A DNA stretch of 64,000 bases from the IMG/VR virus record IMGVR_UViG_3300027985_001318, positions 1-64,000 of that record, one strand, 5' to 3'. Shown here one piece after another: positions 12,876 to 42,867 of the stretch. The position numbers and the translations under genes were made by a program. The first letter of the stretch is position 1. Each line of letters begins with the position of its first letter. The notes under the pieces are model-generated. The model made no database searches. It had not been told where the DNA came from and saw only the letters and a list, made by a program, of their open reading frames with translations.

Positions 12876-14396
12876 ATGACCGAGATTATCAAGAACAAAC
12901 ACATGGTGGCATATCCGGACGGCGGATGTCGAGGTAATGAGCGTAGCGCAGGTAGCGGAGCTCATTGTTTTATCTGGGAAGATGAAGACGAACCGGTTTC
13001 TATCAAGGACGGCAAAAATCTTCGCAAAGGGCTACCGACTAGCCACGGTTATATCGATGACAATAACTTAGGTTTTCTCGAACAATCCGACGCCTTGGTA
13101 GTGACTCCAGTTACCTTCATCGATTACCATCACGGACTGCCGTTCTCCACCAATAACATCGCTGAACTTGAAGGGGCTATTTTCTCACTCACTAAAGCTC
13201 TTGAGCTTAAAGTGAAGTCCTTTGTGATGATCCCCGACTCCGAGTATGTTATTAATGGGGCCACTAAATGGCTACCTGGTTGGATCAAGAACAATTGGGT
13301 TAGTGGTTCTGGAGCCCCGGTGAAAAACCAAGAGCTTTGGATACAAGTAGCCGATCTAATCAAACAGTTACGCGATAACGGTACTACCATTACCATTTTC
13401 TGGGTAAATGGTCATTCTGGTAATTTGGGTAACGACGAAGCTGACCGCCTGGCCACTAAGGGTGTGATACTTGCTTCCAAGGGCCTTGAAGAGAAGATGG
13501 TAGAAGAAAAGCCAGCTCGAGGCTATTGGAATTACAAGGCCCCTTATAACCGGATGTTCTTCCAGCCACATTGGTACTTCGCCACTCAAACCAACCGTAG
13601 TGCTCGTACTCCAGATGGTCGATCCATCTACTACGCCGGACATCACTCGAAAGAAGATGACTTTTTCATGAAGCGTAGTTCCGATGCTTACGTATCGGTC
13701 CTGTTTTTGAAAGACCCCGAACCGGTATTGGATACTATTGCCGCCTACCAGGAAGCAGCCGAGGTTGGTAATTATGGGGCCGTTTATATTGGCTATCTCA
13801 ACAACATTTTCAACTCTCGGACTTACAGCGAGATGTCGGATACTAAGGATCTGTATCTGACTGCCAGCGAGCCCAAAAAGAACATTTCCTACATCGATTC
13901 TATGTTGACTAGAGCAATGCGTCCAGCCTTGATGTCATGGTGTGCCGATACTGCATTCAGTTCCCTGCAGGGAATTCTGAACGAAGTTGAAGTCGGCCTG
14001 GCCAACGGCAATGAAGCGCCAGTAGTTCACGAAGATGGTCGTTATGAGGTCTGTATTACTGATCTCACTGACGCTATTTTTGAAGTCGACAGTAGCAAGA
14101 AAAAGGAGGTGTATAAACTCAAGCCAGATATTAGTCAAATCACGAAATCCATTAACGTGGAACTGGACCATAACGTAACAGGTAAGTTGGAGAAAACCAA
14201 GGTGATTCTCACTTTGGGTCTCGATATGCCGAACAGGAATTCTCTGTCGGCTATTGCTGGGCCTGATGCGCGCTTTTATGGCGTGACGTGGCGTGAGTCT
14301 AGTCACGGTTTCCGTTATGCAACTGTTGTACGAGCAGCTGGTGATACTTGCATTACAGCAGCTATGTACGCCAACTTAATCGCAATCGCTAAATAA
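12876..14396 (+). CDS. rnhA: Ribonuclease HI with C-terminal extension (phiKZ gp155-like)
   Basis: YPDGGCRG, STNNIAELEGA, DSEYV, WIKNNW..PVKNQELW, WVNGHSGNLGNDEADRLA. Confidence 0.92.
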   Translation: MTEIIKNKHMVAYPDGGCRGNERSAGSGAHCFIWEDEDEPVSIKDGKNLRKGLPTSHGYIDDNNLGFLEQSDALVVTPVTFIDYHHGLPFSTNNIAELEGAIFSLTKALELKVKSFVMIPDSEYVINGATKWLPGWIKNNWVSGSGAPVKNQELWIQVADLIKQLRDNGTTITIFWVNGHSGNLGNDEADRLATKGVILASKGLEEKMVEEKPARGYWNYKAPYNRMFFQPHWYFATQTNRSARTPDGRSIYYAGHHSKEDDFFMKRSSDAYVSVLFLKDPEPVLDTIAAYQEAAEVGNYGAVYIGYLNNIFNSRTYSEMSDTKDLYLTASEPKKNISYIDSMLTRAMRPALMSWCADTAFSSLQGILNEVEVGLANGNEAPVVHEDGRYEVCITDLTDAIFEVDSSKKKEVYKLKPDISQITKSINVELDHNVTGKLEKTKVILTLGLDMPNRNSLSAIAGPDARFYGVTWRESSHGFRYATVVRAAGDTCITAAMYANLIAIAK

Positions 14397-25309: not shown

Positions 25310-28300
25310 TTAATGTCTGAAGCCCATTTCTACTGGCAGTTCCTTACGGTCCTTCTCTCTAGTCGACTTACCGCCGGACTGCTTATCGGATGGTTTATTT
25401 TCCGCTGGCTTACCAGAGCGCTCCTCTCGGATACCCCGGATTTCTTTCAAGAGTTCAGTCAAAGTGACATCCATTGACTTACTTACTTCCAGATGTTCGG
25501 CAGTTATGTCTTTGAGTTCAGTCAATCCGCGACCTGTTTCTTTCGAAACAGAAGATCTTTGGATTTCACTAACCGCCTGCTGATTAACAACAGCAGTTTG
25601 ACCTCTATCGATTACACGATCCTGTCCTTTACTAACAGAGTTGTTAAAGGCAGTTCTTGAAACGGTATTGGTCTCGGTAGTGGCCGTAGTGCTCTGGCTT
25701 TGAGTATCTCCTCTAGGAGCTCTGAAAACCAGATCTGTCTCTTGCGCTGGCGGTGTACTAGTAACTGGTACATCGGCCATCGGGTTAGCACTGCCCCAAC
25801 TAGACGATGGACTGTCTGCTGAAGCTGTGCTGGAAGCCGCAGCGATAGCCGATGGGGCTTGACTATCGTTGTTTTTCACTGTATTGCTTTCAGTGGGTTC
25901 CGGTACTTTGGAAACATCGGCTTCTTTGCCAGTAGCAGCCATCTCCTTAGCAGCCATTCCGTATTTCTGACCGTGTCCGCTAACAAGACCATCGATATGC
26001 TGATAGACCTGAGCTACGGTACGAGGAACTTTGGATGGGGTGTAGAAGATGTTTTCGTTGTTTCTCGCTGCTTTAGGGAACAGCTCGACCGCGTTAGCAG
26101 TAGGTGAGGCCTTTAAGAGCTGGACCGCACCCTCACCGCCGAGGAAGTGTGCCAAATAGATATCGTCGTCGGTAGGCTCTCTACCAATACGGCTTCTCAA
26201 GTAGTTGAGGTTCTGCTTGAGATATTCGGCACCCATTAACGCGTTAGCGCGTGGATCTGTAGCAGGGGTATTAGGATCGATACCGTACTTAGCTCCGTAT
26301 TTCTGCAGCATCTCTGTCCAAGTACCGCTAATGAACTGGTAAAGTCCAACAGCAGAACCCTTCTTGGGACGGGCAGTCACCCTGAAGTTAGATTCGATGC
26401 TTGCCATCGTAGCCATCAGTCCAGGATCAACTCCAGCCATCTGAGCAGCGGCCATGATCAGGTCGCGAACCTTAGCCCAACCGTCTCCGCTAGGGATAGG
26501 TAGGGAGTTGATGTCGCCACCGGTACCGTTACCTGGATGGGTGACTGATCTACCACCACCCATGGTCTGATCACCACTAGTGTCTGGAGTAGCTCCGCCA
26601 CCAAACAGATTACCCCAGAAACCGCCCTTAGTAGAAACAGGCAGTGAGGAGTTTCCGTTGGCTGCTGGATTATAACCGGTATTACCGTAACCAGTACTAA
26701 TTGGACGTGAGAGATTGTACTGTCCGTAGTTGAGGCTGGTAGCTGACGGTTTTGCTACACCGGTTTTGCTATCGATGTTGAGTTCTTTGATTTTGTCTTC
26801 GTCAAGTTTCCCACGTAAAGCAGACATCAAAGGACTTACTGAGGACTGGTCAGTGTTTGGTTCTTGATCTGGGAACGGTGAAGCAGCCACCGACCAAACG
26901 GAAACTTCGTCTCCATTGATCTTAGCCACACTACCTACGATAACTTTGGCAACATCAACCAGGGCGGTTGGCTTCAGTTTCTCGTAAGCATTACCTGGAG
27001 TGGCATACTTATCTGCTTTTCTAATAGCCGAGCAGAAGTTCAACCACACCGGAGTAAACCGGTTAACAAACCAATACAACCAAACCGTACGGTGTTGCTC
27101 GTTGTTAGGATCGCAGTTGAAGTTAGTCGCGAACTTAGTGAACAGAGCAACCGGCTCTACATCCATACTTGCGTTATCAAACCAGCTATACTCCACCTTA
27201 TCAGTAAGGTATTGTTCGAGAGCTAAGGTGGCATTAACGTCCAGTACTTTAAGATCTGATAGACCATAAGCTCTGAGACGAATCCCTGCCAGGTCATCGA
27301 TCTTACGGTTTTGACCGCTCTGCCAGATGAATTCGCCGGAGGCGAATTTCAAACCCTTCGCTTTAGCTCGTTTAATTTCGGTTTCTGAATAGTAGGAAAG
27401 ATCTACGTCAGCCTTTTCGTCTTTCTTTACCCCCAGAGGTTTGGTGGCGTCTTGAGCAGCTGAAGCACCAGGGCGATAAATGCCCTTGGAATCAATCATG
27501 CTGTACTTGGCAGCCACCTTAGTGGATTTGTTAGGGAACTGCTTCACTATCTCGGCGATCTTGTTAGAGATCATCTGCTCCGTGATAGTAATTGGCGTGG
27601 TGGGGAACGGTGATGTAAAGATATCGTAAGCACCACCGCAGTCGCGAACCTTGGTTGCGAACTCACCCTTGAATTTGTCATCGATGCGATCAACGCGTTC
27701 AAGTTTGAGAGAAGGATCAAATGACTTCAGTGTTGCCACTGATTTCAGATAAACTGGTTTGAAACGCTGCGCAAACCAACCAGTCCAAGAACGTACTTGA
27801 TCCTGGTTTTTCGGGTCAACCCCGAACGGTTCTAACAGATCAGCGTATTCCAAATCGTCATCTAATGTCACCTCTCCTTTAGGGGAGATCTTGGTGTGAT
27901 CTTCCAGAGCCGACTCCAGGTTACGAATGACACTGACCTGATCCGACGAAGGATCGAAACCATATTGCATCATTCGAAGCTCGGTTAGCGGACCACCTCG
28001 CGATTGCCACCACTGATAACCCTTATAAGCACCGTAACCCACTGCAGCAACAGCAGCAGTGCCTAAGATCACCATACCTGCGGTGGTACCGGCAGCAGCC
28101 AAAGCGCCACCAGCCAAACTGACGAGAGCTCCTCGAATCACGTTAGTGAGTAAGAAACGACCGCCGGTAGCTACGACGCTCTCACCAATACCAGCCTCGC
28201 CTAACCCAAGTGCGGTTCTACCCCAACTAAAGGCAGTGCGTGCAGTCTGTGAGTTCTTCAACCAAGTAGCGGCTTGTCCAAAACCAGCCTTGGACTTTGA

Positions 28301-31300
28301 GAGTCCTTGCTTAGCAAGTTCTACAGCACCCTTACCGGTTTTGGAATTACCGAAACGATCCCAGAGTTTTTTCGCGTATTGCCCGAATCTGCCGAACTTA
28401 CCGCGAGCTCTAGGACCTCTACCTCTACCTCTACCTCTACCGCGCCCCCTACCTCTTCCTCGATCTTTGCGATCCGTATCGATATCGACATCGTCCATGA
28501 GATCGCCGGCGTCGTCGAGAAGATCAGATCCACCCTTGAGCTTCTTCAGCCACTCAAGCGGATTCAACCATTTCTTTAGGCCACCAACCAAACTCATAAT
28601 CCCACCGAGCACACCGCCAAGCATCCAGCCTAGCCAGGACTTCTCCTTATCCTTCGGTTCGTCTTTCTTCCCTCCCTTGAGACGGTCTTTAAGCTTAGCC
28701 GCTCGTTGACGTAAGATGTCAGCAACGGAGTTGTCTCGCACGCCATCGCCATTACTGTCAAACATACGCTTCTTGCCAGGCAAACGGTTATCGAGCAGGC
28801 TATGGATACGCTTCAGCCAGAAATTCGTTTTACCGGTACCGAACAGAGGCTCTTTGTCGCCGTCCTGCTTTTTCTTGAAGAGAGCTCCAAGACCTTCGAA
28901 AGGAACATCCTTGAGACGACCCAGAAAACCCATACCGGTATCGAGAACTTTCTTACCTACCCGCTTACCTGCTCTAAAAGCCGATGTAGCCAACCCAGCT
29001 AACTTGCGCACACCCCAAGTAGCCAACCCTACCAATCTAGCAGGCAGATTAGCCAAACGCCCACCAAAGCGATTTACAAGGCCGGCCTTGATATCTTCCA
29101 AAGTCAGAACAACATTACCAGCAGCATCAACTACCGGACCATCAATATCGGAATAACCCTTTATGACCTTACCAGTAGTTTTTGAGAAATACTGACCAGA
29201 AAGAATCAACCGAGCTAACAGTTTGGGGGTGCTCATGTCGCTCTTCGAATAAACGTCAAACGGCACGGTAAGTTTGTTGTAGACTCCCTTGATAGCGGAA
29301 ATAGCAAAACGACCTGGGGCGGTAACGATGCTTCTACCTACCCCGACCAACGAACCGGTTGCTTTCAGTATCTTGGCAATCATTCCAGTCCTGATACGCT
29401 TACCATTGACGTCAAATAACCCTTCTTTCAGCTGTTCGGCTGTGAGTAACAGGTTGCCGCTATGGTCACAAACAGGTCCCGAGATGTCATCGACGTAATC
29501 GATAACTTTACGGCTTTGGAAATCCAAGTACTCTCCGGCGCGGAAACCTGCGGCTGTAAGTACAGGTTCCTTTCTATCACGGATATAAACGTCCATTACT
29601 CGGGATTTCTTGTACAAGCTCTCGAACAGTGTCCGTTTCTTACCGAAAAAGAGCATGGCTTGCTCTTTTCTCTTTTTGAACTCTTTGTTCAAATTGCCGT
29701 TACTGAAAACTTTACCGTATCGATCGACGACGTCTTTCTTAAGTTCATCGTACTTGACAACAACATTGCCCTTTGCGTCGAGCACGTCTGAACTAATATC
29801 ATCCCAGGACTTAAGGACTTTGTTAGTAGCTGAGTCGTAATACTCTCCAGCTCGTAACTTAGCCAGTTCCAGAACAGGACTATTAATACCTTTCCTGTAC
29901 AGATCACCGACCCCGGCCTTAATTAAACCAGCCTTTTGACGCAGGTAGTCGATACCGCCACCAACACCACGGAACGGGGCAGCTATTACACCGCCTGCCA
30001 AACGACCCGCCAGTTTGGTAGTACCCCAACCGAATCTACCGGCTTGTTTGCCCAGCCACCAGCCAGCTTTACTGGTACCAATGCCAGTACGCCAACCGAG
30101 CTTTCCGACACCAGCGCCGAGAGAAAGAGCTGAGTCAGTCAGCCAGCCAACCGCACCACCAAAGCTACGCTTATGGCCTTGTCCGGAGGAGGGGATCCCC
30201 CCTCCGGTATTATCTTGTTTCTTTTGGAGAAATGAGAAAATTTCCCCTACCAGTTTATTTGTCTCTTCAACCCTACTGCTAGATGAGTTAGCCTTGATGG
30301 CTTCGACCAATCTGCTGGTACTTTCGTTGAGCGTGTCTTCAAAGCGGTCGCCAAGACCAGCCTCCAACCTTACTTGTCCGGCTTCTTGCTTTGGAGCCGG
30401 AGTAGGCGAAGGGGTAGACGGATCACGATCACCACCAGAGAGACGATTGCTAACGAGAGGAGGCATAGGCCCATTACGGCTACCCTGCTCGTTGCTTTCA
30501 GTTCTTCCGTCACTGCTATTTTCTCCAGTATTACCGGCAACACCAGTATAACGTTTTAAGAGGTATCGAGAATCCACCAAATCGTTGGTACGATCTTTAT
30601 ACAACAGCCCAAGGTCGCGCAACACGTCGCGATGACCCGTATTTGCGTACTTGTTAACACTTTCACCTACGTTAGGCAGATAGCGCGACAGGGCAGTAAA
30701 GAGTGCGTCGTCGCGATTACGATTGGTTTGGGCTCGCTCGCCCTTACCCATCTTACCATCCCAATCGATTTCATAACGATCTTGGAACAGTGCCCGTAGT
30801 TCTTGTCGCACCTCCTCGTCTACGTCAGGACCCCAGAACTCGTCTGAGGCATATTTCTCCGGGTCGTACCGACCACCATCGATGCTGTGTTGCAAGAGAC
30901 GCTCTTTAAGAGCTTTGTTGGCCGAGGCCGACAATTTGTCTTGCCCGCCAGCTAAGTGGTCTGAGAGACGCTGTAAAGACTCATCAGTGTACTTAAGAGA
31001 ACCCTGGGAAAGAATTTTGTTACCGACGTCTTCTTTTAACTGATCATAGCCAGTGAATTCTTGACGTTCGGCATTCCATACGAGTCTCTGACCCAACGTA
31101 CCGGTACGAAGCCCCTCTAGAGACTGCAACTGGCGCGATAACAGGCCGGGAATGATTTCGTTGATGGATTGATGGGTTTGATTATCGAACCTTGCTGATT
31201 CGAAAGCTTTGTTGACCCCGTTGTTCTCGACCAGTGTCTGGTTGCGATAAGTTGGCAGGTTCCACTTAAGCATGTCTACTAAAGCGGCACCGGGTCTACT

Positions 31301-32521
31301 CCAGTCAGTATCTGACTTGGCGAATTCGTCAATGTACCCGGCCTTATTACGGATAGCGTAAGCTAACTTCTGTCCGTTAGCTACTATCGTTGGGTTGTTG
31401 TCGGTGAACTTTCTGACATGTTTTCCAACCTTAGAACCAAGCCAGTCAGCCAGGTAACCGCCAGCCATGCGACCAGCCATAGTGCGACGCATGTCGTTGG
31501 GATCTTGACCCATATCGGCAGCCATTTCTTCAGCTGACTGCATGTCTTCGAAGAACTGACCAGCACTAGACAAATTATCGGAGAAACCCTGCGCCGCATC
31601 TAGTGTGCTTTCCCGGATGTTTTCAAAGATACGTTCCAGGAAATTACCAGACCATTGACTGAAGCTTTCGCCAACTTTACCTATCATCTTGTCACGCAGA
31701 TACTTCTTACCTTCTTCGGTAGTGTTCTGCTTGACGTATTCTGGCAAGCCGGTGTTTTTAGCAATGGCTGCCAGGTTTTCGATGACAGTCTTAGAGCTAT
31801 TACCTAGCAAATCATAGGTATCTCGTTGGACGAAGTAACTACGATACTGGAGCTCCAGGGACTTGCGTTGATATTTGTAAACGATGTTGTCACGGAAACC
31901 AGCGGCTCGGTTTTCCAGATCTGCTATTTGTTGCAGTAAGGTAATCGTGCCGGTGTGACGTTTGTCTTCTTTGGTTTCGCGGATCGAAGCCTCAGCAGAT
32001 TGTCGCTCAGCGACATAAGCCTGTTGTTCAATCTGGGTTTCAAAGACATCTTTCAAACTATCATTTATTGTGGCTTCGTCCTGGGCGCGCTGGCTTTTAA
32101 CCCGGCTTTCTTCAGGATCTTCACCAAGTTCCTTAAGCTTATTTACGACGCTATCAGGAAGGTATTTCTCCACTTTCGGTAATAGGCTCTTTGTCGCGCG
32201 AGCAAAGTCGCGCATACCGGGCTTGATTACCTGAGTGGCTTCATTGTATAGACTACGGCTTTTGCCGTAGATATTTGCACTTAATTCGACAGCATCGCCG
32301 TACCCATCGGGTAGGGCTGCGCGGACAAAGTTTTTAACGAACTTGGAGTCCGTAACTGTGTCTTTAGCGCCCTCCAGCACTGCGTCCTTTACCTTAGTGG
32401 TTGGGGTACGATCATCAGCTGGCGGGTCTGTGTCGAACGAATCGAAGTCATCGAAATTATCGAAGTCTTGATTGTCATCGTCGAGTTCGAACTCGTCTGA
32501 ATTGTTACCTTTATTAGCCAT
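25310..32521 (-). CDS. Tail tape-measure-like protein with SLT lytic transglycosylase domain (phiKZ gp181-like)
   Basis: ~2403 aa from ATG 32521 (AAGGGTG SD); SLT motifs IESNF, AVGLYQFISGTW, YLAHFLG near the C-terminus; divergent from vRNAP beta'. Confidence 0.88.
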   Translation of the reverse strand: MANKGNNSDEFELDDDNQDFDNFDDFDSFDTDPPADDRTPTTKVKDAVLEGAKDTVTDSKFVKNFVRAALPDGYGDAVELSANIYGKSRSLYNEATQVIKPGMRDFARATKSLLPKVEKYLPDSVVNKLKELGEDPEESRVKSQRAQDEATINDSLKDVFETQIEQQAYVAERQSAEASIRETKEDKRHTGTITLLQQIADLENRAAGFRDNIVYKYQRKSLELQYRSYFVQRDTYDLLGNSSKTVIENLAAIAKNTGLPEYVKQNTTEEGKKYLRDKMIGKVGESFSQWSGNFLERIFENIRESTLDAAQGFSDNLSSAGQFFEDMQSAEEMAADMGQDPNDMRRTMAGRMAGGYLADWLGSKVGKHVRKFTDNNPTIVANGQKLAYAIRNKAGYIDEFAKSDTDWSRPGAALVDMLKWNLPTYRNQTLVENNGVNKAFESARFDNQTHQSINEIIPGLLSRQLQSLEGLRTGTLGQRLVWNAERQEFTGYDQLKEDVGNKILSQGSLKYTDESLQRLSDHLAGGQDKLSASANKALKERLLQHSIDGGRYDPEKYASDEFWGPDVDEEVRQELRALFQDRYEIDWDGKMGKGERAQTNRNRDDALFTALSRYLPNVGESVNKYANTGHRDVLRDLGLLYKDRTNDLVDSRYLLKRYTGVAGNTGENSSDGRTESNEQGSRNGPMPPLVSNRLSGGDRDPSTPSPTPAPKQEAGQVRLEAGLGDRFEDTLNESTSRLVEAIKANSSSSRVEETNKLVGEIFSFLQKKQDNTGGGIPSSGQGHKRSFGGAVGWLTDSALSLGAGVGKLGWRTGIGTSKAGWWLGKQAGRFGWGTTKLAGRLAGGVIAAPFRGVGGGIDYLRQKAGLIKAGVGDLYRKGINSPVLELAKLRAGEYYDSATNKVLKSWDDISSDVLDAKGNVVVKYDELKKDVVDRYGKVFSNGNLNKEFKKRKEQAMLFFGKKRTLFESLYKKSRVMDVYIRDRKEPVLTAAGFRAGEYLDFQSRKVIDYVDDISGPVCDHSGNLLLTAEQLKEGLFDVNGKRIRTGMIAKILKATGSLVGVGRSIVTAPGRFAISAIKGVYNKLTVPFDVYSKSDMSTPKLLARLILSGQYFSKTTGKVIKGYSDIDGPVVDAAGNVVLTLEDIKAGLVNRFGGRLANLPARLVGLATWGVRKLAGLATSAFRAGKRVGKKVLDTGMGFLGRLKDVPFEGLGALFKKKQDGDKEPLFGTGKTNFWLKRIHSLLDNRLPGKKRMFDSNGDGVRDNSVADILRQRAAKLKDRLKGGKKDEPKDKEKSWLGWMLGGVLGGIMSLVGGLKKWLNPLEWLKKLKGGSDLLDDAGDLMDDVDIDTDRKDRGRGRGRGRGRGRGRGPRARGKFGRFGQYAKKLWDRFGNSKTGKGAVELAKQGLSKSKAGFGQAATWLKNSQTARTAFSWGRTALGLGEAGIGESVVATGGRFLLTNVIRGALVSLAGGALAAAGTTAGMVILGTAAVAAVGYGAYKGYQWWQSRGGPLTELRMMQYGFDPSSDQVSVIRNLESALEDHTKISPKGEVTLDDDLEYADLLEPFGVDPKNQDQVRSWTGWFAQRFKPVYLKSVATLKSFDPSLKLERVDRIDDKFKGEFATKVRDCGGAYDIFTSPFPTTPITITEQMISNKIAEIVKQFPNKSTKVAAKYSMIDSKGIYRPGASAAQDATKPLGVKKDEKADVDLSYYSETEIKRAKAKGLKFASGEFIWQSGQNRKIDDLAGIRLRAYGLSDLKVLDVNATLALEQYLTDKVEYSWFDNASMDVEPVALFTKFATNFNCDPNNEQHRTVWLYWFVNRFTPVWLNFCSAIRKADKYATPGNAYEKLKPTALVDVAKVIVGSVAKINGDEVSVWSVAASPFPDQEPNTDQSSVSPLMSALRGKLDEDKIKELNIDSKTGVAKPSATSLNYGQYNLSRPISTGYGNTGYNPAANGNSSLPVSTKGGFWGNLFGGGATPDTSGDQTMGGGRSVTHPGNGTGGDINSLPIPSGDGWAKVRDLIMAAAQMAGVDPGLMATMASIESNFRVTARPKKGSAVGLYQFISGTWTEMLQKYGAKYGIDPNTPATDPRANALMGAEYLKQNLNYLRSRIGREPTDDDIYLAHFLGGEGAVQLLKASPTANAVELFPKAARNNENIFYTPSKVPRTVAQVYQHIDGLVSGHGQKYGMAAKEMAATGKEADVSKVPEPTESNTVKNNDSQAPSAIAAASSTASADSPSSSWGSANPMADVPVTSTPPAQETDLVFRAPRGDTQSQSTTATTETNTVSRTAFNNSVSKGQDRVIDRGQTAVVNQQAVSEIQRSSVSKETGRGLTELKDITAEHLEVSKSMDVTLTELLKEIRGIREERSGKPAENKPSDKQSGGKSTREKDRKELPVEMGFRH
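28400..28462 (-). repeat. Hexamer repeat (AGAGGT)n encoding an RG dipeptide tract
   Basis: + strand acctct x4; protein DRGRGRGRGRGRGRGPRARG. Confidence 0.85.
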
Positions 32522-32587
32522 TTTTTGCACCCTTGCAAATAAGATAAGGCTGAATCTACTCATACCTTTTATCGAGTTGAGGCTACC

Positions 32588-34222
32588 ATGGCAAATCGTC
32601 CACCACTTAATCTCTCGATACTGAAACCCACAAAAGAGATGTTGCAGACTTTACGTCCAGTAAAAGTTTCCGATATTTTCGATGGGATGTCCACTAACTT
32701 CCATGAAGATGGGCTTTTCAGTGTCTCTACTTTTGGCCGGGTCGGCTCTGACGAACGAGATAAACGTTTCGGCTTTATCAACATCAAGGTACCGATTTTT
32801 CACCCGCTCCTTTACAAGCGCCTGATGTCATTAAAGGCGCTTTATAGCACTGTTATTTCGGGCAAGAGCTTTGCGAAATGGGACCCGATATCTAACGATC
32901 TGGTACTAGCCAGACCAGATGACGAGGGAGCCGGTACCGGCTTTGGGTTCTTTGTAGAGCACTGGGAGAAGATTCGTTTCCATACTACTCAGTCTCTGCA
33001 GCGACAGATGAAGATCGAAGTTATTGAACGGAATCGTCATAAGGCATTGACCGACAAGATCTTGGTGTTACCTGCTGGCTTGCGAGACATTGAGATCGAT
33101 GCCGATGGTCGGAAAGTCGAGGACGAACTTAACAATCCGTATCGTCGTTTGATAGCCGTTTCTAATACCATACCCGATAGTATTTCTGATTTCAACGCTC
33201 CATTCCTGGACAGTTCCAAGCGTAGCTTGCAAACCTCTTTTGGTTTGGTCTACGAAATGATCAACCAGATCCTTTACGGGAAGAAAGGCTTTATCCAAGC
33301 CAAATGGGCAAGTCGTCGAATCTTCAATGGTACTCGTAACGTTATTAGTACCATGGAAACTGCATCTGAAGTTTTCGATGGGCCGCGAAGTGCTGACTTG
33401 CAAGACACTCAGATTGGTTTGTTGCAGACCATGAAATCCGCATTGCCGGTAGCTGTGCACTGCTTAATGACCGGATGGCTGTCTCAGGTGTTTGGTAACG
33501 CCGATCAGAGCGCGGTGTTGGTTAATCCGAAAACCTGGCACGCCGAATACGTAGATGTGGACGTCGATACTATCGATCGTTGGACTACTGCCGAAGGTCT
33601 CGAGAAAGCTATTGAGCGTTTCAGCGAAACCAAGATCCGTCAAAGACCTCTTCGCATCGATGGGTACTATGTTGGATTGGTTTATGTAGATGAAAAGCAC
33701 TTCAGGATCTTCAACGACATTGATCAGCTTCCGAAACATCTAGATAAAAAGAACGTACATCCGATGACTATGACTGAGTTGATGTATCTGTCAGGTTATC
33801 GGCGCTGGTATGAGCTTTACACTTTCGGTACTCGATTCCCTGTAGCTGAATTAGGTAGTATGTACCCGTCTCGGGTGTATACTCGGACTACAGTCATAGC
33901 CTCTGCTAAAGAAGAGTTGGATGAAAACTGGGAACCGAAGGGCAAAGAATTCGTTGCAAAGGAGTTTCCTGTATCCGATCTCACCGCTCCTTTCATGGAC
34001 TCGCAAGCACCACATCCAAGTAACCTGAAGAACTTACAAGGTGACCACGACGGCGATACAATGTCTTGCGATACCGTCTATATCCAGGAGTCTATCGAGG
34101 AAGTTAAGAACTATCTCAACAGTTTGGCATCGATCATGACGCCGTCTGGTAAAATCTATACTCCGGCCAATACCGACACCATCGAACTGGTGTTGCGTAA
34201 CATATTGAGAACTCCGAAATGA
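32588..34222 (+). CDS. Virion RNA polymerase beta'-like catalytic subunit (phiKZ gp180-like)
   Basis: DGLFSVSTFG, VLPAGLRD, GKKGFIQ..RRIFNGTRNVI, RFP, catalytic loop GDHDGD. Confidence 0.92.
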   Translation: MANRPPLNLSILKPTKEMLQTLRPVKVSDIFDGMSTNFHEDGLFSVSTFGRVGSDERDKRFGFINIKVPIFHPLLYKRLMSLKALYSTVISGKSFAKWDPISNDLVLARPDDEGAGTGFGFFVEHWEKIRFHTTQSLQRQMKIEVIERNRHKALTDKILVLPAGLRDIEIDADGRKVEDELNNPYRRLIAVSNTIPDSISDFNAPFLDSSKRSLQTSFGLVYEMINQILYGKKGFIQAKWASRRIFNGTRNVISTMETASEVFDGPRSADLQDTQIGLLQTMKSALPVAVHCLMTGWLSQVFGNADQSAVLVNPKTWHAEYVDVDVDTIDRWTTAEGLEKAIERFSETKIRQRPLRIDGYYVGLVYVDEKHFRIFNDIDQLPKHLDKKNVHPMTMTELMYLSGYRRWYELYTFGTRFPVAELGSMYPSRVYTRTTVIASAKEELDENWEPKGKEFVAKEFPVSDLTAPFMDSQAPHPSNLKNLQGDHDGDTMSCDTVYIQESIEEVKNYLNSLASIMTPSGKIYTPANTDTIELVLRNILRTPK

Positions 34223-37200
34223 TTACTTATCAGCAGTTTTATCGTCGTTATGGGGTAAGAAAGCTGGAAGAGTTGTTGGTATTCAAACAGAAACCCCTGC
34301 GTGGGTGTTTGCTACCGAATCGTCCGGTTATTCATTTACTCCCGAGCAATCTACAAGAAACCAAAGTAGACATGAATGACTACTTCATTTCTTCGCAGAA
34401 GGGACTGACTTACTGCATTCATCAAACTGAGCTGAAATCGGAAATTGGTAACCCGGTCAGAAACTCTGTAAACGCTCAGGGTCTTGTACGTCAGCTGGAG
34501 AAAACACAGCGCAGCTTGCGGCGAGTTCGACAATTCGAAACCGTTAATCGCGATCAGCGGGCGGCTTTGATTGTTAACTATTCGCCATTGCAAGCACTCT
34601 ATCGTTATCGAATTAGTTTCCTTACCAGCTGGCAGCGTTGGGCAAATATTTTCGCAACAATGACTGCTAACATCAGCGAGCTCTCCAAAGAGACAGACCG
34701 TCATCACTATCTGCGTTTTGACATTCCTGAGTTTCTCCCTTCTATTTCTGCTCTGCGGATGGGTGCTCGTGGGATGTCTAAAATGGTGGTGGAAACACTC
34801 CGTACACCGGAGGCGTTCTTTTTGCTGGAGTTGTGGAAGTGGTCTATTCGTGAACCTTCTTTGTTTGACGGTTTGCCGAAAGAACATCTCGACAAGTTTA
34901 CTCTGCTGATAGTCGACGGCGATCGTTTTGGTAGCCTCAACTTTGGTCAGTTGTCTGAGTGGCGCGAAGCTGGTACCCGGGTAGATGAAAACGGAGAAGT
35001 GCGTTCAGTAGGTAACTTTTCTCGTCAACTGCTCTATCTGTTCGTACAGTTCGTTAAAGGGCGTACCGCAGATCCAGCAACGAACGATCTCAAAGAGACA
35101 CCAGCAGAAACCAAGGAGCTTGAAGATACGCTCAACCATCTCTCTGGCGACGATGAGAGCGATAACCAAGCCGCAGAAGAAATCATGGAAGAAGATGCTG
35201 AGCAGGCTGAAGAAGATCTCGATAAACTGGTAGAAGAGATCAACGAGCAAGCTAGCGAATTAGATAATGATTTCGATATCGAAGACGATTCTGTTTTCGA
35301 AACAGCCGGGCCGGTAAAGAAGGAAACTAGCAACACCAGTAATGGCGGTAGCCTTGATGTAACAAAGGCTCCGGAGACTGGAGTTCAGCGAAAAGTCGAA
35401 GAACTCAGTAAAACAGGGATTCTTTCGGCGGCTGAACAAAAGCGGTATCATAAGCTATCGGAAACTTACTTGCGGCTACCTAACCCTTACGGAAAGGGTA
35501 CGATTGCCGAAGCGATCGCTTACGACCCGATGGAAACCAAGATAGATCCGGCAGCTACCAGGTTGGAAGATATCGAAGGCGTGCTTGATAAAAGTATGCT
35601 CAACGATACCCTCACTGTGTTTGATGAGGAATATATCACGAAAGTATTGCATCGCGATATACTTCGCTCAGTAATGGCTTTCCAACGCGATGGTACTTCA
35701 ATTACCGACATCAAAGTAACTCGTGTAGTCGATGCCGTAAACAAGTATGATGTTATCACTCTGAGACTTCAACCGGTGAACGGTAAGCCAACCACTCTGA
35801 ACATTAAAGTTCAAGTGATCGAGAAGGACGGTACTTGGGTAGCTGATGGTGTTAACTATCGACTGCGGAAACAACGTCGCGAATACCCCATCGTAAAAAC
35901 GGCTCCGGATCAAGTAGCTCTTTCCAGCTATCTTGGTAAGTTGTTCATTAGTCGTAGCAGTAAGGTAGTACATGACTTTGACCGCTGGATGCAGGCGCAA
36001 ATCATCGGAGCAGTAATGGCTGGTGATAGCCAAATCAGTTCTATCAGCTATCGAGCACATCGCAGTAAAGCAGTTATCCCCCCGCTACCTAGGATTTATA
36101 CTGGGCTAGCCAAGCGTTTTAACGCTTTCACCGCTAACGGTTATCGTGTCTTTATTGACTATGTAAACCGTAATGAGTTCTTTACCGAAAAAGAGCTTTC
36201 AGTGGAACAGGCCAATCCTGGATTGGTATTGTTCGCTAAAGGCGTAGATGCTGGAATCAAGGATCAGTTATTGTTGGTTGACGATAACGGTACGATTTAC
36301 TCTGTCGGTAAGGCCGGTCTTGCGGTTTATGGAGATATCAGCACTTTAACTGGTATTGATCTATCCAAGGCTCCGCTGCAGCAAGACGTGATCAAATTGC
36401 TCGGTAAGAATGTTCCACTCGGGGCAGTAATTTGCTACTACTTTGGTTTGGATCAAGCCATTACCAAACTTGGCGCTAAAGTACGTCGCGTCCAACGTGG
36501 TAGCAAAATAGAATTGGAATCCGATGAATACGCCATTCGATTCCAAGACCAAGTTCTGGTCTTCTCTAAGCAAGACCGTGCCGCCAGTTTGTTGTTTGCT
36601 GGTTTCAACACGTTTGCTAGACAGATCAACTGTTATCCTGTTGCCGAGTACAACAAGAAAGATATCTACCTGAACCTCTTCGAGAGTATCGGGTTAGGTG
36701 TCCGCTATCTTCGTGAGCTCGATCATCTGGATCGTTATTTCATCGATCCCATGACTCTGAAGATTCTTGTTGAACATAACGAACCTACTGACTTTGTTGG
36801 TTTGTTGTTAAAGGCCAATGAGTTGCTGACTACGGATTACGTGGAGAAGAAACGTCGGATGTTGAAGGGCTATGAACGGGTTGCTGCTGCGGTCTATCGC
36901 GAAGTGGCTCAGTCTAGCCGTAACTACAACTCGCGGCCGACGTCTCCCCGCTATGGCGTTGATCTTAAGCCTACGGCGATCTGGCAGGCTATCCAACAGG
37001 ACCCGAGTATCTCTCAGGTACAGAACATCAACCCGATCCACAACCTTAAGGAACAGGAAGCAGTTACTGAAGGCGGTACTGGTGGTCGTAGTAGTCGAAC
37101 TGTGACAGCTGAACATCGGGCTTACGATAAGGACGACTTTGGGGTTATCTCAGAGGCAACTGTCGATAGTTCCGAAGTGGCCATCTCTACTTCCACTTCA

Positions 37201-37320
37201 GCCGATCCAAACTTAATATCTCTGACTGGCGAGACGCGCGAGTTCGATAAAGACAACGATGGGATTGTTTCCATTATGTCTACGTCAGCCAACGCGTCGC
37301 CATGTGCGTTGCACGATGAT
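34219..37320 (+). CDS. Virion RNA polymerase beta-like subunit (phiKZ gp178-like), exon 1
   Basis: NPIHNLKEQEAVT..GTGGR, GVISEATVDSS; ends at ALHDD, the RpoB HDDxxR motif; 1034 codons. Confidence 0.9.
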
Positions 37321-37716
37321 CAAATTCGGGTCCGGTTGGTGAGTAATTACCAACTGAGCGCTTCTTAATTGACGGGAACCCAATTGTAATCTAAAGCCTT
37401 GTACACCAACCCAATCAGGGAAACCTATTGGCGGCTGAACTAATCACTCAGGTATGGTAACAGAGACAAGGATGAGGCTATTTGGCCGAAATGGGGAATC
37501 ACGCAGCAAAGCTCCTAAGGTTCTACGGAATACGGAGTGGGTCCAACGACTATGGGAGTTCATCGCCCATACACGAGCAAGTGCCGTGGAAATAGAAGCC
37601 CCCTCTAGTGAGGGTGAAGATATAGTCTGAACATCCAAGGAAAACTTGGAGCAGTCCTTTACTGTCGGGAGACAGCGAGGGGCGGGGTGGCTTAACGACC
37701 CATCCGAACAAAATTG
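37321..37716 (+). mobile_element. Group I self-splicing intron (IA2-like, no homing endonuclease ORF)
   Basis: P AATTGACGGGAAC 37367-79; Q AATCACGCAGC 37497-507; R GTCCAACGACTATG 37541-54; S AAGATATAGTCT 37617-28. P3 GCTTCT/AGAAGC, P7 GACTA/TAGTC. Exon-terminal U pairs with G in P1; terminal G at 37716. Confidence 0.93.
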
Positions 37717-40511: not shown

Positions 40512-40532
40512 AACTAGTTAAAGGATAAGTTG

Positions 40533-41300
40533 ATGGAAATCGAACTCATTTCTGGTAAGTCGAGGAAGAACCAGCTCGGTATGTTCAAGAACATGCAGAG
40601 AAGTTCCTCACTCACCCATCAGGACTGGATTGAACTACCTGACGGTTCTATCATTACGAAAGAAGGTTGTAAAGTTTATTTCCCTGTTAGCTGGACTGAG
40701 TGCGGTTTGGCTTCCGTTGGCGACGACATCCAAGTACTCGGCTTCTTCACCGCAGTGTACGGTAGTCGCTTCACGGTAGGATCGGCTATGTCCATGGTGC
40801 GGTTAAGTCCGGCTATCGTGAACATCGTTAAGGGTTTTGACGAAGACTATTACGAGCTAACTTTCGACCAAGGCGGCTTGGTTATGGAAACCTCCGCGAT
40901 AGTTATCGACGATACTCTTTCTTACCGGGTTTACAAACGTTTCGTGGAAATGGGAAAAGTCCCTATTTACATGGATTCGTTGGATATCATCACGATGTTC
41001 AAGAACGTACGTTATTGCTGCGGCAGTAAGCTAGGCGATGGAGAGTCTGTATTGACAGCTATTAGTTGTTCGATACTTCGAGACCCACAGGATCTCAGCA
41101 GACCCCTTAGTTTGTCCAAAGAAGGTCCTTTCTCGCATGGCGACTATGATTTCGTGATTGTTCCGTTCAGAGATGTTCAATTCGGTGCCAGCAACGTTAC
41201 GGCGAAAGTTAGCGGTAGTTACGCCGACATTGCTATCAACTCAGCCCTAGTGAACCCAAGTGATCGCTCAGAGGCTATGGAAGACGGATTACGGCTATGA
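40533..41300 (+). CDS. Conserved virion protein (phiKZ gp176-like by synteny; possibly vRNAP-associated)
   Basis: 255 aa; C-terminal TAKVSGSY..AINSALVNPS faintly resembles the RpoC C-terminus. Confidence 0.6.
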   Translation: MEIELISGKSRKNQLGMFKNMQRSSSLTHQDWIELPDGSIITKEGCKVYFPVSWTECGLASVGDDIQVLGFFTAVYGSRFTVGSAMSMVRLSPAIVNIVKGFDEDYYELTFDQGGLVMETSAIVIDDTLSYRVYKRFVEMGKVPIYMDSLDIITMFKNVRYCCGSKLGDGESVLTAISCSILRDPQDLSRPLSLSKEGPFSHGDYDFVIVPFRDVQFGASNVTAKVSGSYADIAINSALVNPSDRSEAMEDGLRL

Positions 41301-42034
41301 CCATTGATGCTGAAGAACGTAAAGAATTTGATCGTGCAATTGAATTGCTTCCTGACTCTGTCTCCAAAGGCCTTAAGGTTGTTTCACCGTCTGACTTACC
41401 GGCCGGTACTTTGTACCATATTTCAACCAATCATAACATCCCGACTTTTATCCCTTGCGTTTCTAAGCGCACTATGGAAGGAGAGGATCGTACCGTACCG
41501 AGGGTTTGTGTTAGTCCGGACGTATTGAAGGCCATGCTTGGCTACGGCGCTGTTTACAGCGATTTCCAGGATTGGGACGAAAAGAAACAGCGTTTGAAGA
41601 ACAACGCTTATTGGATGATCTATCGCTTCGATTTCGACTTGGCGATTCGTCCAGTTAAACGCCTGCTACCGGATCAACGTGATACCGATGAACACTGGTT
41701 AATCACTTACTCCAAAAAGACTCGCGAGTATAAACCCACTAAAATCGGCAAGCTGAAGATGGTTGGTTACAGTACTCAGTACAAGAATGGTCAGATGGTT
41801 GATCGCCTGGAATTGGTGATCGAAGTCACTGGCTCAGAAATCCTTTTCTCTGACGGCGTGCTGTTAACTAAGGGGTTTTATAAACTTTGTCTTTCTAACT
41901 GGAAAGTAAGTAACCGAAAACATACAGAGATTTCGGTTACAAGCACTGCTATCAAGAAAGACGAGTACGACGCTTACATGAGAGAACGGGTTTCTCTTGA
42001 ACATTTACCACCATCTGCTTCCTGGGGGTCATGA
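41297..42034 (+). CDS. Putative ADP-ribosyltransferase-fold virion protein
   Basis: LYHIS...FIP...GEDRTVPRVCVSPD...DTDEHWL gives an H / S / E pattern; C-terminal VSLE-HL-PPSASW. Confidence 0.45.
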   Translation: MTIDAEERKEFDRAIELLPDSVSKGLKVVSPSDLPAGTLYHISTNHNIPTFIPCVSKRTMEGEDRTVPRVCVSPDVLKAMLGYGAVYSDFQDWDEKKQRLKNNAYWMIYRFDFDLAIRPVKRLLPDQRDTDEHWLITYSKKTREYKPTKIGKLKMVGYSTQYKNGQMVDRLELVIEVTGSEILFSDGVLLTKGFYKLCLSNWKVSNRKHTEISVTSTAIKKDEYDAYMRERVSLEHLPPSASWGS

Positions 42035-42819
42035 TGGCTACTGCTACTTTGATCTACGCTGGCGATCCATTGGCCGGCACTAACAAGGCCGGTAAGCTCA
42101 AAGTCAACGATGAAGGTTATTACCTGGACGTTGTTTTGGGCGCACTGGATGTTTTCAATTCGGCTGGCGCTATGTATGTTTCTGAACCGGCTTTGCCGTT
42201 GTTCAAAGACAATACTAACCTTCAACGTCAAGCCCAGACACGGAATCTCCGTGGCGAGTACGGCCATCCAAAACGCCTGCCGAACCAATCCATCCAGGAT
42301 TTCGTTCGCCGCTGCTGTACTATCTACGAAGACTGTGTTTCTCACCACATGACTAACTTGCGTTTGATGCCTACCAATCAGCCTGGCGCTAAAGGCAAGA
42401 AGGTTATCCTGATTATCGCTGACGTCAAGCCCTGCGGTCCTCACGGAGCGGTTCTGAAAGCTCAGCTCGATAACCCGAACGAAAACGTCTGCTTCAGCAT
42501 TCGTTCTCTGACCGAAGACGTGATGGTTGGTGGGGTGATCGAGAAACGTCTCCGCACCATCATCACCTGGGATTACGTGAACGAGCCTGGGATCAGTTAC
42601 GCAAACAAGTTCCAAAGTCCTTCTCTGGAATGCGTGTATGGTGATGATGTGATTATCACGGCCGATATCGTTCGTTCGTTGCAGTCTGACTACGAAGCTT
42701 CTGGCATGGGCAATGAGAGTTACGGCCTGGCACTGGAAAGCGTGGTGGCTGCTTTCGGACTTGCTGAGCTCGAGCACAAGCAGAAAGAATTCGCTGTTCC
42801 TCCTAGCGCCAGCTGGTAA
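42031..42819 (+). CDS. Prohead maturation serine protease (phiKZ gp175 / T4 gp21-like)
   Basis: LRGEYGHP, VSHH, FSIRS, TWDYVNEPG; C-terminal SLE and ALE candidate autocleavage sites. Confidence 0.88.
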   Translation: MMATATLIYAGDPLAGTNKAGKLKVNDEGYYLDVVLGALDVFNSAGAMYVSEPALPLFKDNTNLQRQAQTRNLRGEYGHPKRLPNQSIQDFVRRCCTIYEDCVSHHMTNLRLMPTNQPGAKGKKVILIIADVKPCGPHGAVLKAQLDNPNENVCFSIRSLTEDVMVGGVIEKRLRTIITWDYVNEPGISYANKFQSPSLECVYGDDVIITADIVRSLQSDYEASGMGNESYGLALESVVAAFGLAELEHKQKEFAVPPSASW

Positions 42820-42822
42820 CCG

Positions 42823-42855
42823 AATAAGAGAGGGCAAGTGCCCTCTCTTATTTTT
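42823..42855 (+). terminator. Intrinsic terminator
   Basis: AATAAGAGAGGGCA-AG-TGCCCTCTCTTATTTTT. Confidence 0.85.
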
Positions 42856-42867
42856 ACGGTTTAAAAA

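What the first reader, a model, noticed from the sequence alone, without database searches (positions are those of the whole stretch)
41993..42819. Shared C-terminal PPSASW tag after an S-L-E site: candidate head-loading signal
Seen: two adjacent, otherwise unrelated proteins end in VSLEHL-PPSASW-GS and SLE...ALE...AV-PPSASW. Five of the six codons differ (CCA CCA TCT GCT TCC TGG versus CCT CCT AGC GCC AGC TGG), which points to selection on the peptide rather than DNA duplication. Inference: a cleavable C-terminal capsid-targeting sequence, analogous to the N-terminal T4 CTS, and potentially usable to load cargo into jumbo phage heads.
Basis: partly seen in the sequence, partly recalled or inferred. 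Interest (0 to 1): 0.6.

Follow-up and report, generated by a model that had tools for sequence, protein, structure and literature searches.

The report
Shared C-terminal tryptophan tag, jumbo-phage head proteins
The head-maturation protease of a nucleus-forming jumbo phage and an unrelated neighbouring head protein end in the same short Pro-x-Ser-Ala-x-Trp peptide, which is conserved and co-evolves across hundreds of related phages and most likely docks both proteins into the assembling capsid.

Summary
ORF A (41297-42034) ends LPPSASWGS, and the overlapping next gene (42031-42819, a Peptidase S80 / phiKZ gp175-type prohead protease) ends VPPSASW. This hexapeptide occurs nowhere else in the six-frame translation of the 223,650-bp genome.

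It is a family-wide feature:
- 120 of 120 close protease homologues have Trp in the last four residues, and 113 end in Trp.
- 133 of 150 diverse ORF A relatives do too, with the same consensus P-[PA]-[SYF]-[AL]-[KRN]-W.
- Profile comparison aligns the two families only over these 8 columns.
- Tails from the same genome resemble each other more than shuffled pairs do (p = 1.5e-4, 10 independent genomes).
- Only 8 of 35 shared tail residues use the same codon, so gene conversion is unlikely.

Published SPN3US work supports a head-loading role. The protease's C-terminal propeptide is auto-cleaved. A mutant lacking its last 26 residues is active but missing from proheads. The ORF A homologue gp246 is a head protein by mass spectrometry.

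Only two proteins carry the tag, the S-L-E site in ORF A is lineage-specific, and gp246 reaches the head without a tag. The receptor is unknown. ORF A has an enzyme-like conserved core with a weak resemblance to ADP-ribosyltransferases.

The parts
41297..42034 (+). ORF A, 245 aa: SPN3US gp246-like head protein family (phrog_5043), with an enzyme-like conserved core (H41, E63, R69, E132, W134) and a C-terminal tag
   Evidence: AF2 model pLDDT 86. The SPN3US homologue gp246 is listed as a head protein.
41993..42001 (+). S233-L234-E235 in ORF A: fits the [SAG]-x-E motif of S80 proteases, a possible cleavage site 10 residues from the end
   Evidence: Sequence. Motif from PMC5694885 and PMC10052503. 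The site is not conserved in the family: the column is Leu in 87% of members. 24 of 54 members have any such site nearby, against a 22% background.
42005..42031 (+). ORF A tag L-P-P-S-A-S-W-G-S (W243 at 42023-42025)
   Evidence: 133 of 150 family representatives have Trp in the last 4 residues. The tag has low pLDDT in the AF2 model.
42031..42819 (+). Prohead (head maturation) protease, Peptidase S80 / phiKZ gp175 type, 262 aa; its ATG overlaps ORF A's TGA (ATGA)
   Evidence: PF20034 E 7.7e-69. phrog_3014. H79, S156 and D181 are invariant. The best PDB fold match is T4 gp21, 5jbl.
42622..42630 (+). S198-L199-E200: invariant Glu in the disordered linker after the catalytic domain, the likely autocleavage site that frees the 62-residue propeptide
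   Evidence: E200 is invariant in 120 homologues. Residues 191-204 have pLDDT below 50. The SPN3US AQE site lies in the same linker and phiKZ keeps SPALE. Autocleavage is shown experimentally only for SPN3US and phiKZ.
42709..42738 (+). Second and third candidate cleavage sites in the propeptide: G227-N228-E229 (invariant Glu) and A234-L235-E236
42793..42816 (+). Protease tag A-V-P-P-S-A-S-W (P257 nearly invariant, W262 invariant, free C-terminus)
   Evidence: 113 of 120 homologues end in Trp, consensus [KR]-P-[APG]-[SWYF]-[ALM]-x-W. The SPN3US am66 truncation lacking the last 26 residues is not incorporated.
42828..42857 (+). Hairpin plus T-run: terminator-like site that closes the gene block right after the protease
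40530..41300 (+). Upstream virion structural protein (phiKZ gp176 / SPN3US gp244-like, phrog_2926); its stop overlaps ORF A's ATG; it is conserved in synteny and has no tag

Best explanation
The PPSASW ending is this phage's version of a conserved C-terminal docking peptide, consensus P-[PA]-[SYF]-[AL]-[KRN]-W at or within 3 residues of the C-terminus. Two unrelated proteins of nucleus-forming jumbo phages and their relatives carry it: the S80 prohead protease and the gp246-like head protein (ORF A). My proposal is that both tags bind the same site on a component of the assembling prohead, either the scaffold/core or the inner face of the capsid shell. This would place a set number of copies of each protein inside before the shell closes. 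The protease then cuts its own propeptide at the invariant [SAG]-x-Glu sites (E200, E229), which detaches the catalytic domain from the docking site. In this clade ORF A has also acquired an S-L-E site and may lose its last 10 residues in the same way. Shown here: the motif, its conservation in both families, its co-variation within genomes, and the lack of codon sharing. Taken from the literature on SPN3US and phiKZ: propeptide autocleavage, the need for the last 26 residues for incorporation, and gp246 in heads. Inferred: that the tag itself is the docking element, that the two tags share one receptor, and what that receptor is.
For: (1) The tag is present and unique in the genome. (2) Protease family: Trp in the last 4 residues in 120 of 120, with W262 invariant and P257 nearly invariant. 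It is also seen in isolates SPN3US, Eowyn, PCH45, Desertfox, Xoo-sp14, RP12, DT01 and LucasX. (3) ORF A family: 45 of 54 unique sequences from loci and 133 of 150 representatives at 50% identity carry it, and 997 representatives match the family profile. (4) The families are unrelated apart from the tag. (5) Tails from the same genome are more alike than shuffled pairs: BLOSUM sum 96 versus 29.9, p = 1.5e-4 in 10 independent genomes, and p < 5e-5 in 14. Extensions after the Trp also match, for example WGL/WGKR, WGL/WGK and WK/WQ. (6) Only 8 of 35 shared residues use the same codon. (7) The tag stays at the extreme C-terminus when extra domains are fused, as in ORF A-NUDIX and ORF A-HNH. Tagless members stop exactly where the tag would begin. 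(8) The SPN3US propeptide is auto-cleaved, and the am66 truncation is active but not in proheads (PMC7411985, PMC5694885, PMC10052503). (9) SPN3US gp246 is a head protein with spectral counts similar to the protease's. (10) The three genes overlap by ATGA and end at a terminator, which fits co-expression.
Against: There is no direct binding or packaging evidence for the tag itself in any phage. SPN3US gp246 lacks the tag yet is in heads, and phiKZ gp175 ends RPGFMR without the Trp although it is functional, so the tag is not indispensable. The am66 result removes 26 residues, not just the tag. The receptor is unidentified. The S-L-E site in ORF A is not conserved in its family. Virion annotations of relatives call ORF A homologues 'hypothetical', not 'structural', although many of those annotations are by homology only.
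Confidence: 0.6

Rival explanations
1. The tag is a protease-centred regulatory or partner peptide. It binds the protease itself, in cis as part of a zymogen-like propeptide or in trans. ORF A uses the same peptide to bind, ride with or modulate the protease, not to bind a capsid or scaffold site.
For: The two genes are adjacent or near each other in most genomes. SPN3US gp246 and gp245 have similar spectral counts. In the AF2 model the protease's C-terminal 58 residues are helical with pLDDT 58-88 and the tag is about 70-77, higher than a free tail usually gets. In ORF A's model the tag is about 43-62. The co-variation would also fit this explanation.
Against: Recombinant SPN3US protease lacking the last 26 residues is active, so the tag is not needed for folding or activity. 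Noxifer's ORF A carries the tag but sits in a different gene cluster. The same consensus on both proteins fits two ligands of one receptor better than a lock-and-key pair. I could not inspect contacts in the model.
Confidence: 0.17
2. The tag is a localisation or turnover signal unrelated to encapsidation. It could target the proteins to the membrane site where proheads nucleate, keep them out of the phage nucleus, or act as a C-terminal degron that limits free protease and free enzyme in the cytoplasm.
For: The motif is short, terminal and ends in a hydrophobic residue, as C-terminal degrons and PDZ-type ligands do (general knowledge). [quoted passage not shown] The phage encodes a nuclear shell protein.
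Against: Both carriers are head proteins in SPN3US. Truncating the C-terminus abolishes incorporation and does not raise abundance. The motif does not match the known ClpX or Tsp tags that I know of. Only two proteins carry it.
Confidence: 0.1
3. The match is chance similarity or recent gene conversion between neighbouring genes, with no function.
For: The genes are adjacent and the motif is only six residues long.
Against: The expected chance count is about 0.003. The motif is conserved in hundreds of diverged homologues of both families. 27 of 35 shared residues use different codons, including TCN versus AGY serines. The tag is also present when the two genes are not adjacent.
Confidence: 0.01

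Closest known systems
C-terminal propeptide of giant-phage S80 prohead proteases (phiKZ gp175, SPN3US gp245, 201phi2-1 gp268)
   Same: The protease belongs to the same family (PF20034). [quoted passage not shown]
   Different: In what I could search, those papers do not define the terminal P-x-S-A-x-W motif, its near-universal conservation, or its presence and co-variation on a second head protein family.
Shared C-termini of protease and scaffold in herpesviruses (UL26/UL26.5) and phage lambda (C/Nu3)
   Same: A maturation protease and a second prohead protein carry the same C-terminal capsid-binding end, which the protease releases. This comparison rests on established knowledge.
   Different: In those systems the shared end comes from nested in-frame genes with identical DNA, and the partner is the scaffold. 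Here there are two separate, unrelated genes with different codons, and the partner is a globular, enzyme-like protein.
HK97 protease C-terminal capsid-targeting tail
   Same: The C-terminal end of a prohead protease is needed for encapsidation and can carry foreign proteins in (from my knowledge of Duda et al. 2013, not read here).
   Different: The protease family and sequence differ, and no second protein is known to share the tail.
Encapsulin cargo-loading peptides
   Same: A short C-terminal peptide is shared by unrelated cargo enzymes and binds the inside of an HK97-fold shell (established knowledge).
   Different: Binding to the shell is not shown here. The motif differs (Trp-terminal versus Gly-Ser-Leu type). 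The tag is followed by proteolytic release.
T4 capsid targeting sequence (CTS) of IPI-III and Alt
   Same: A short peptide directs proteins into the prohead core and the prohead protease removes it after a Glu.
   Different: The T4 CTS is N-terminal and is carried by several internal proteins. This tag is C-terminal and is carried by two proteins only.

Membership tests
Peptidase S80 (phiKZ gp175-type prohead protease) | Match to the family profile above threshold | tested here: met
   PF20034 at 231.8 bits against a cut-off of 23.4, residues 13-231; phrog_3014 head maturation protease.
Peptidase S80 (phiKZ gp175-type prohead protease) | His/Ser/Asp catalytic residues and the T4 gp21 / herpesvirus protease fold | tested here: met
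   H79, S156 and D181 are invariant in 120 homologues. By position they correspond to SPN3US H77/S153/D178. The top PDB fold match is T4 gp21 5jbl with probability 1.0, followed by HCMV protease.
Peptidase S80 (phiKZ gp175-type prohead protease) | C-terminal propeptide removed by autocleavage after Glu | not testable with these tools
   Candidate sites are present and invariant (E200, E229). Cleavage itself is shown only for SPN3US and phiKZ in the literature.
T4-type capsid targeting sequence | N-terminal peptide of about 10 residues, removed by the prohead protease | tested here: not met
   The tag is C-terminal in both proteins. The similarity is functional only.
Herpesvirus/lambda-type nested protease-scaffold pair | Shared C-terminus produced by in-frame nested genes | tested here: not met
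   These are separate ORFs in different frames with different codons. The profiles align only over 8 columns.
Cargo-loading / capsid-targeting C-terminal peptides (HK97 protease, encapsulin CLP) | Short C-terminal peptide shared by otherwise unrelated proteins that end up inside the shell | tested here: met
   The shared motif is shown. Both carrier families are head proteins in SPN3US.
Cargo-loading / capsid-targeting C-terminal peptides (HK97 protease, encapsulin CLP) | The peptide binds the shell or scaffold and is sufficient to load foreign cargo | not testable with these tools
   This needs binding or packaging experiments. The only related data are from the SPN3US am66 truncation.
ADP-ribosyltransferase fold (for ORF A) | ART core fold | tested here: inconclusive
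   In the VIA-align wide search about 15 of the top 25 chains are ART-fold proteins (Scabin, CARDS, TreX, MTX, Tpt1, pertussis S1, pierisin, ParT, LT, RES, MbcT), but the best Z is 5.3, within the tool's noise range. Foldseek against PDB found nothing. The language-model search gave Arr-ms (PF12120) for all 30 named hits at 0.93.
ADP-ribosyltransferase fold (for ORF A) | Sequence-profile match, or an H-Y-E / R-S-E catalytic signature | tested here: inconclusive
   Pfam, NCBIfam and PDB profiles gave no hit. H41 (on a predicted strand, in LYHISTN), R69 and E132 (before a strand, in TDEHWL) are 99-100% conserved. This is compatible with an ART-like site but does not prove one.

The most novel reading that the evidence does not exclude
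The 7-10-residue Trp-terminal peptide may be a portable, family-wide address label. It would be sufficient to load any protein into the proheads of nucleus-forming and related jumbo phages through one conserved receptor pocket. Its second natural user, ORF A / gp246, may be a packaged NAD-utilising enzyme (an ADP-ribosyltransferase-like protein, similar in concept to T4 Alt) that is delivered into the host with the DNA.
Probability: 0.2. Interest if true: 0.8.

Novelty: new variant of a known kind. Interest (0 to 1): 0.6.

Why it matters
How the roughly 50 proteins of giant-phage heads are sorted into the prohead is an open question. The only published clue for the protease is that 'the C-terminal propeptide is probably involved'. 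This finding narrows that clue to a defined motif under purifying selection. It shows that a second, unrelated head protein uses the same motif, and it gives co-variation evidence for a common receptor. The question becomes directly testable with tag deletion, a Trp point mutant, tag-GFP packaging, and a search for the receptor by pull-down or cryo-EM of protease-null proheads. If the tag proves sufficient, it would be a very small handle for loading cargo into jumbo-phage capsids. The work also flags a large family (about 1,000 clusters at 50% identity) of enzyme-like head proteins with unknown activity.

Tried and rejected
- Complex prediction of the major capsid protein (genome 134156-136345, alignment A3) with protease residues 201-262 gave score 0.00, 'no answer'. 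This is no evidence either way, and the receptor remains unknown.
- Megablast of the region against the phage collection found no match.
- For ORF A, Pfam, NCBIfam and PDB sequence profiles gave nothing. Foldseek against PDB gave nothing. The ESM-atlas fold search returned only the protein's own family plus one GNAT fusion. The PF12120 HMM found nothing in the genome.
- I looked for a third tagged protein. There is none in this genome; the runner-up is a spurious antisense ORF. In Xoo-sp14 a 971-aa tail-region protein ends RPGSLIWK, but its Desertfox homologue continues past that point, so I treat the resemblance as chance.
- Gene conversion is rejected on codon usage.
- I considered ORF A as a scaffold, in the herpesvirus/lambda manner. 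This is unlikely because the model is a compact alpha/beta protein with invariant polar residues.
- A universal 'cleavable after S-x-E' rule for ORF A is rejected.
- The phiKZ gp175 paper (PMC3719823) is not held, so the exact phiKZ autocleavage site is not cited.
- I did not use reads tools or alternative genetic codes.

Full report
**What is there**

The window is the first 64 kb of a single-contig, 223,650-bp phage genome with terminal repeats. The genome encodes a phiKZ-type major capsid protein and a nuclear-shell (chimallin) protein, so it is a nucleus-forming jumbo phage. It has no close DNA relative in the phage collection.

At the finding's coordinates, three + strand genes overlap by ATGA and end at a hairpin-plus-T terminator (42828-42857):
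- 40530-41300 is a phiKZ gp176 / SPN3US gp244-like virion protein (phrog_2926).
- 41297-42034 is ORF A (245 aa, phrog_5043, no Pfam family).
- 42031-42819 is a Peptidase S80 prohead protease. It matches PF20034 at E 7.7e-69 and phrog_3014. H79, S156 and D181 are invariant, and its best PDB fold match is T4 gp21.

These assignments rest.

**Check of the observation**

ORF A ends VSLEHLPPSASWGS and the protease ends FAVPPSASW. PPSASW occurs only at these two places in the six-frame translation of the whole genome. Profile-profile comparison of the two families aligns nothing but the 8 tail columns.

**The tag is a family feature**

- Protease family: among the 120 best homologues (42-81% identity), 113 end in Trp and all 120 have Trp in the last four residues. 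The consensus is [KR]-P-[APG]-[SWYF]-[ALM]-x-W. W262 is an invariant alignment column and P257 is nearly invariant.
- Cultured phages show the same ending: SPN3US ..GVRSW, Eowyn ..GSQLW, PCH45 ..SLENW, Desertfox ..AHLRW, Xoo-sp14 ..PPSADWK, RP12 ..IWSNW, DT01 ..SSWRW and LucasX ..PASARW. phiKZ gp175 ends ..RRPGFMR, one residue short of the Trp.
- ORF A family: it is large, with 997 representatives at 50% identity and E <= 1e-3. Of the best 150, 133 carry Trp in the last four residues and 122 end in Trp, with consensus P-[PAIK]-[SYF]-[ALS]-[KRN]-W. Of 54 unique sequences from fetched loci, 45 carry it.
- Tagless members stop exactly where the tag would begin, after a conserved A-x-L-L-S segment. 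When extra domains are fused (NUDIX, an HNH insertion), the tag moves to the new extreme C-terminus. The tag therefore behaves as a module that depends on its terminal position.

**Co-evolution without gene conversion**

I collected both genes from the same genome in cultured phages, IMG/VR contigs and metagenome contigs. Examples of ORF A tail / protease tail:
- LPPSASWGS / VPPSASW
- VPKSAQWGL / VPKSAKWGK
- KPLSADWGL / IPASAKWGKR
- RPGSAYW / APGSTRW
- EPPSAHW / LPPSARW
- RPVSMQWK / RPASANWQ
- ..RGSELW / ..IGSQLW
- CAGSYEW / KAGSFNHW

Tails from the same genome are more alike than shuffled pairs. With 14 non-identical pairs the BLOSUM sum was 153 versus 54.7 (p < 5e-5). With 10 pairs chosen as independent it was 96 versus 29.9 (p = 1.5e-4), and identities were 23 of 60 versus 14.8 (p = 0.003).

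Of 35 residues shared between paired tails, only 8 use the same codon. The likeness is therefore kept by selection on the peptide, not by DNA exchange. Together these results indicate one common binding partner.

**Link to head assembly (literature)**

- In SPN3US the homologous protease gp245 loses a 64-residue C-terminal propeptide by autocleavage at A-x-E (PMC5694885, PMC10052503). phiKZ gp175 and 201phi2-1 gp268 are also processed at the C-terminus (PMC9026906).
- An amber mutant that lacks only the last 26 residues yields an enzyme that is active in vitro but absent from proheads. [quoted passage not shown] Those 26 residues include the Trp tail.
- The SPN3US homologue of ORF A is the gene just downstream of the protease (E 2e-12, 209 aa, 23.9 kDa). 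This is SPN3US_0246, which the mass-spectrometry supplement lists as a head protein in virions and tailless heads, with spectral counts like those of gp245.
- Both carrier families are therefore head proteins. However, gp246 has no tag, so another route into the head exists in that lineage.

**Cleavage**

In the protease, E200 (S-L-E, inside a linker with pLDDT below 50) and E229 (G-N-E) are invariant. All 120 homologues have [SAG]-x-E sites upstream of the tag.

In ORF A the S-L-E site is peculiar to this clade. In 137 aligned relatives the column of E235 is Leu in 87%. Any [SAG]-x-E within 25 residues of the tag is found in 24 of 54 members, against a 22% background. 'Cleavable' is therefore well founded for the protease and only possible for ORF A.

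**How general the tag is**

A position matrix of the tag finds no third carrier in this genome. In Xoo-sp14, which lacks ORF A, the only other hit is a tail-region protein whose homologue does not end there. The tag serves two proteins and is not a general signal for head cargo.

**What ORF A is**

The AF2 model is confident (pLDDT 86) except for the tag. H41, P53, E63, R69, E132, W134 and G193 are 99-100% conserved in 137 relatives, which points to an enzyme.

Two weak but concordant leads suggest an ADP-ribosyltransferase-like fold:
- The exhaustive structure search lists mostly ART-fold chains at the top, but with Z <= 5.3, which lies in the tool's stated noise range.
- The language-model search returned only Arr-type rifampin ADP-ribosyltransferase clusters, at 0.93.

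One relative is fused to a NUDIX domain and one to a GNAT domain. No sequence profile supports the assignment. I treat it as a lead at about 35-40%. If it is true, ORF A would be a packaged enzyme similar in concept to T4 Alt.

**Mechanism proposed**

Both tags bind one site in the nascent prohead, on either the scaffold/core or the inner shell. The protease then frees itself by cutting its linker. ORF A stays in the head, with or without its last 10 residues.

The main rival is that the tag binds the protease itself, with ORF A riding on it or regulating it. A localisation or degron role is less likely. Chance and gene conversion are excluded.

**Comparison and novelty**

The principle is known: C-terminal targeting of a prohead protease (HK97), a C-terminus shared by protease and scaffold (herpesviruses, lambda), and cargo peptides (encapsulins). 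For S80 proteases the targeting role of the propeptide has already been hypothesised.

In the literature I could search, the following appear to be new:
- the defined Trp-terminal motif;
- its near-universal conservation;
- its independent presence on a second, unrelated head-protein family encoded by a separate gene;
- the within-genome co-variation.

I rate it a new variant of a known kind, with interest 0.6.

**Limits**

- No binding or packaging experiment exists for the tag itself, and the receptor is unknown.
- The paired-tail sample is small.
- I could not inspect contacts in the predicted models.

Noticed in passing
window 41297-41300 and 42031-42034: Both gene junctions (gp176-like/ORF A and ORF A/protease) are 4-bp ATGA overlaps, which suggests translational coupling of the three genes. 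A terminator-like hairpin follows at 42828-42857.
   Followed up: partly
window 40530-41300; L001-L004, L067-L069: The upstream gp176/gp244-like virion protein has its own conserved C-terminal ending across phages (..E-x-[LI]-L-R-x, e.g. EDGLRL, ESLLRM, EKLLRV, EEILRK, EELLRT). It differs from the Trp tag and its role is unknown.
   Followed up: no
L007 2351-3163 (phiKZ gp175): The type S80 protease of phiKZ keeps the SLGW box and R-P-G-F-M but ends in Arg, lacking the terminal Trp that is otherwise almost universal in the family.
   Followed up: partly
L005 16617-17246 (SPN3US gp246): In SPN3US the ORF A homologue lies downstream of the protease rather than upstream, has no Trp tag, and is still a head protein by published mass spectrometry.
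   Followed up: yes
P0280, P0160, P0259, P0256 (ORF A relatives): The ORF A domain is found fused to NUDIX, GNAT acetyltransferase, an HNH endonuclease insertion and a PhiKZ_VTX vertex-protein domain. Several ~480-aa members hold two copies in tandem. Some of these may be gene-calling fusions.
   Followed up: partly
L063 17612-20527 (Xoo-sp14 gene 144): A 971-aa protein in the tail gene cluster ends RPGSLIWK, resembling that phage's protease ending RPPSADWK. The Desertfox homologue continues past this point, so the resemblance is probably chance.
   Followed up: partly
window 41974-42837 (- strand): A 287-aa antisense ORF spans the whole protease gene. There is no evidence that it is a gene.
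   Followed up: no
window 12876-14396: This 506-aa ORF contains an internal AMRPALMSW that scores 15.6 bits on the tag matrix, but it is not at the C-terminus (residue 347). It is probably chance.
   Followed up: no
window 25310-37368: The neighbourhood matches the phiKZ gp181-gp178 block: a 2417-aa ORF on the - strand (the phiKZ gp181 and SPN3US counterparts are annotated as tail fiber), followed by two ORFs at 32588-34222 and 34219-37368 that, from synteny with SPN3US and phiKZ, are virion RNA polymerase subunits.
   Followed up: no
genome 75994-77967 and 134156-136345 (outside the window): A nuclear shell protein (phrog_4795) and the major capsid protein (phrog_3231, PF25620) identify the phage as a chimallivirus-type, nucleus-forming jumbo phage.
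   Followed up: yes
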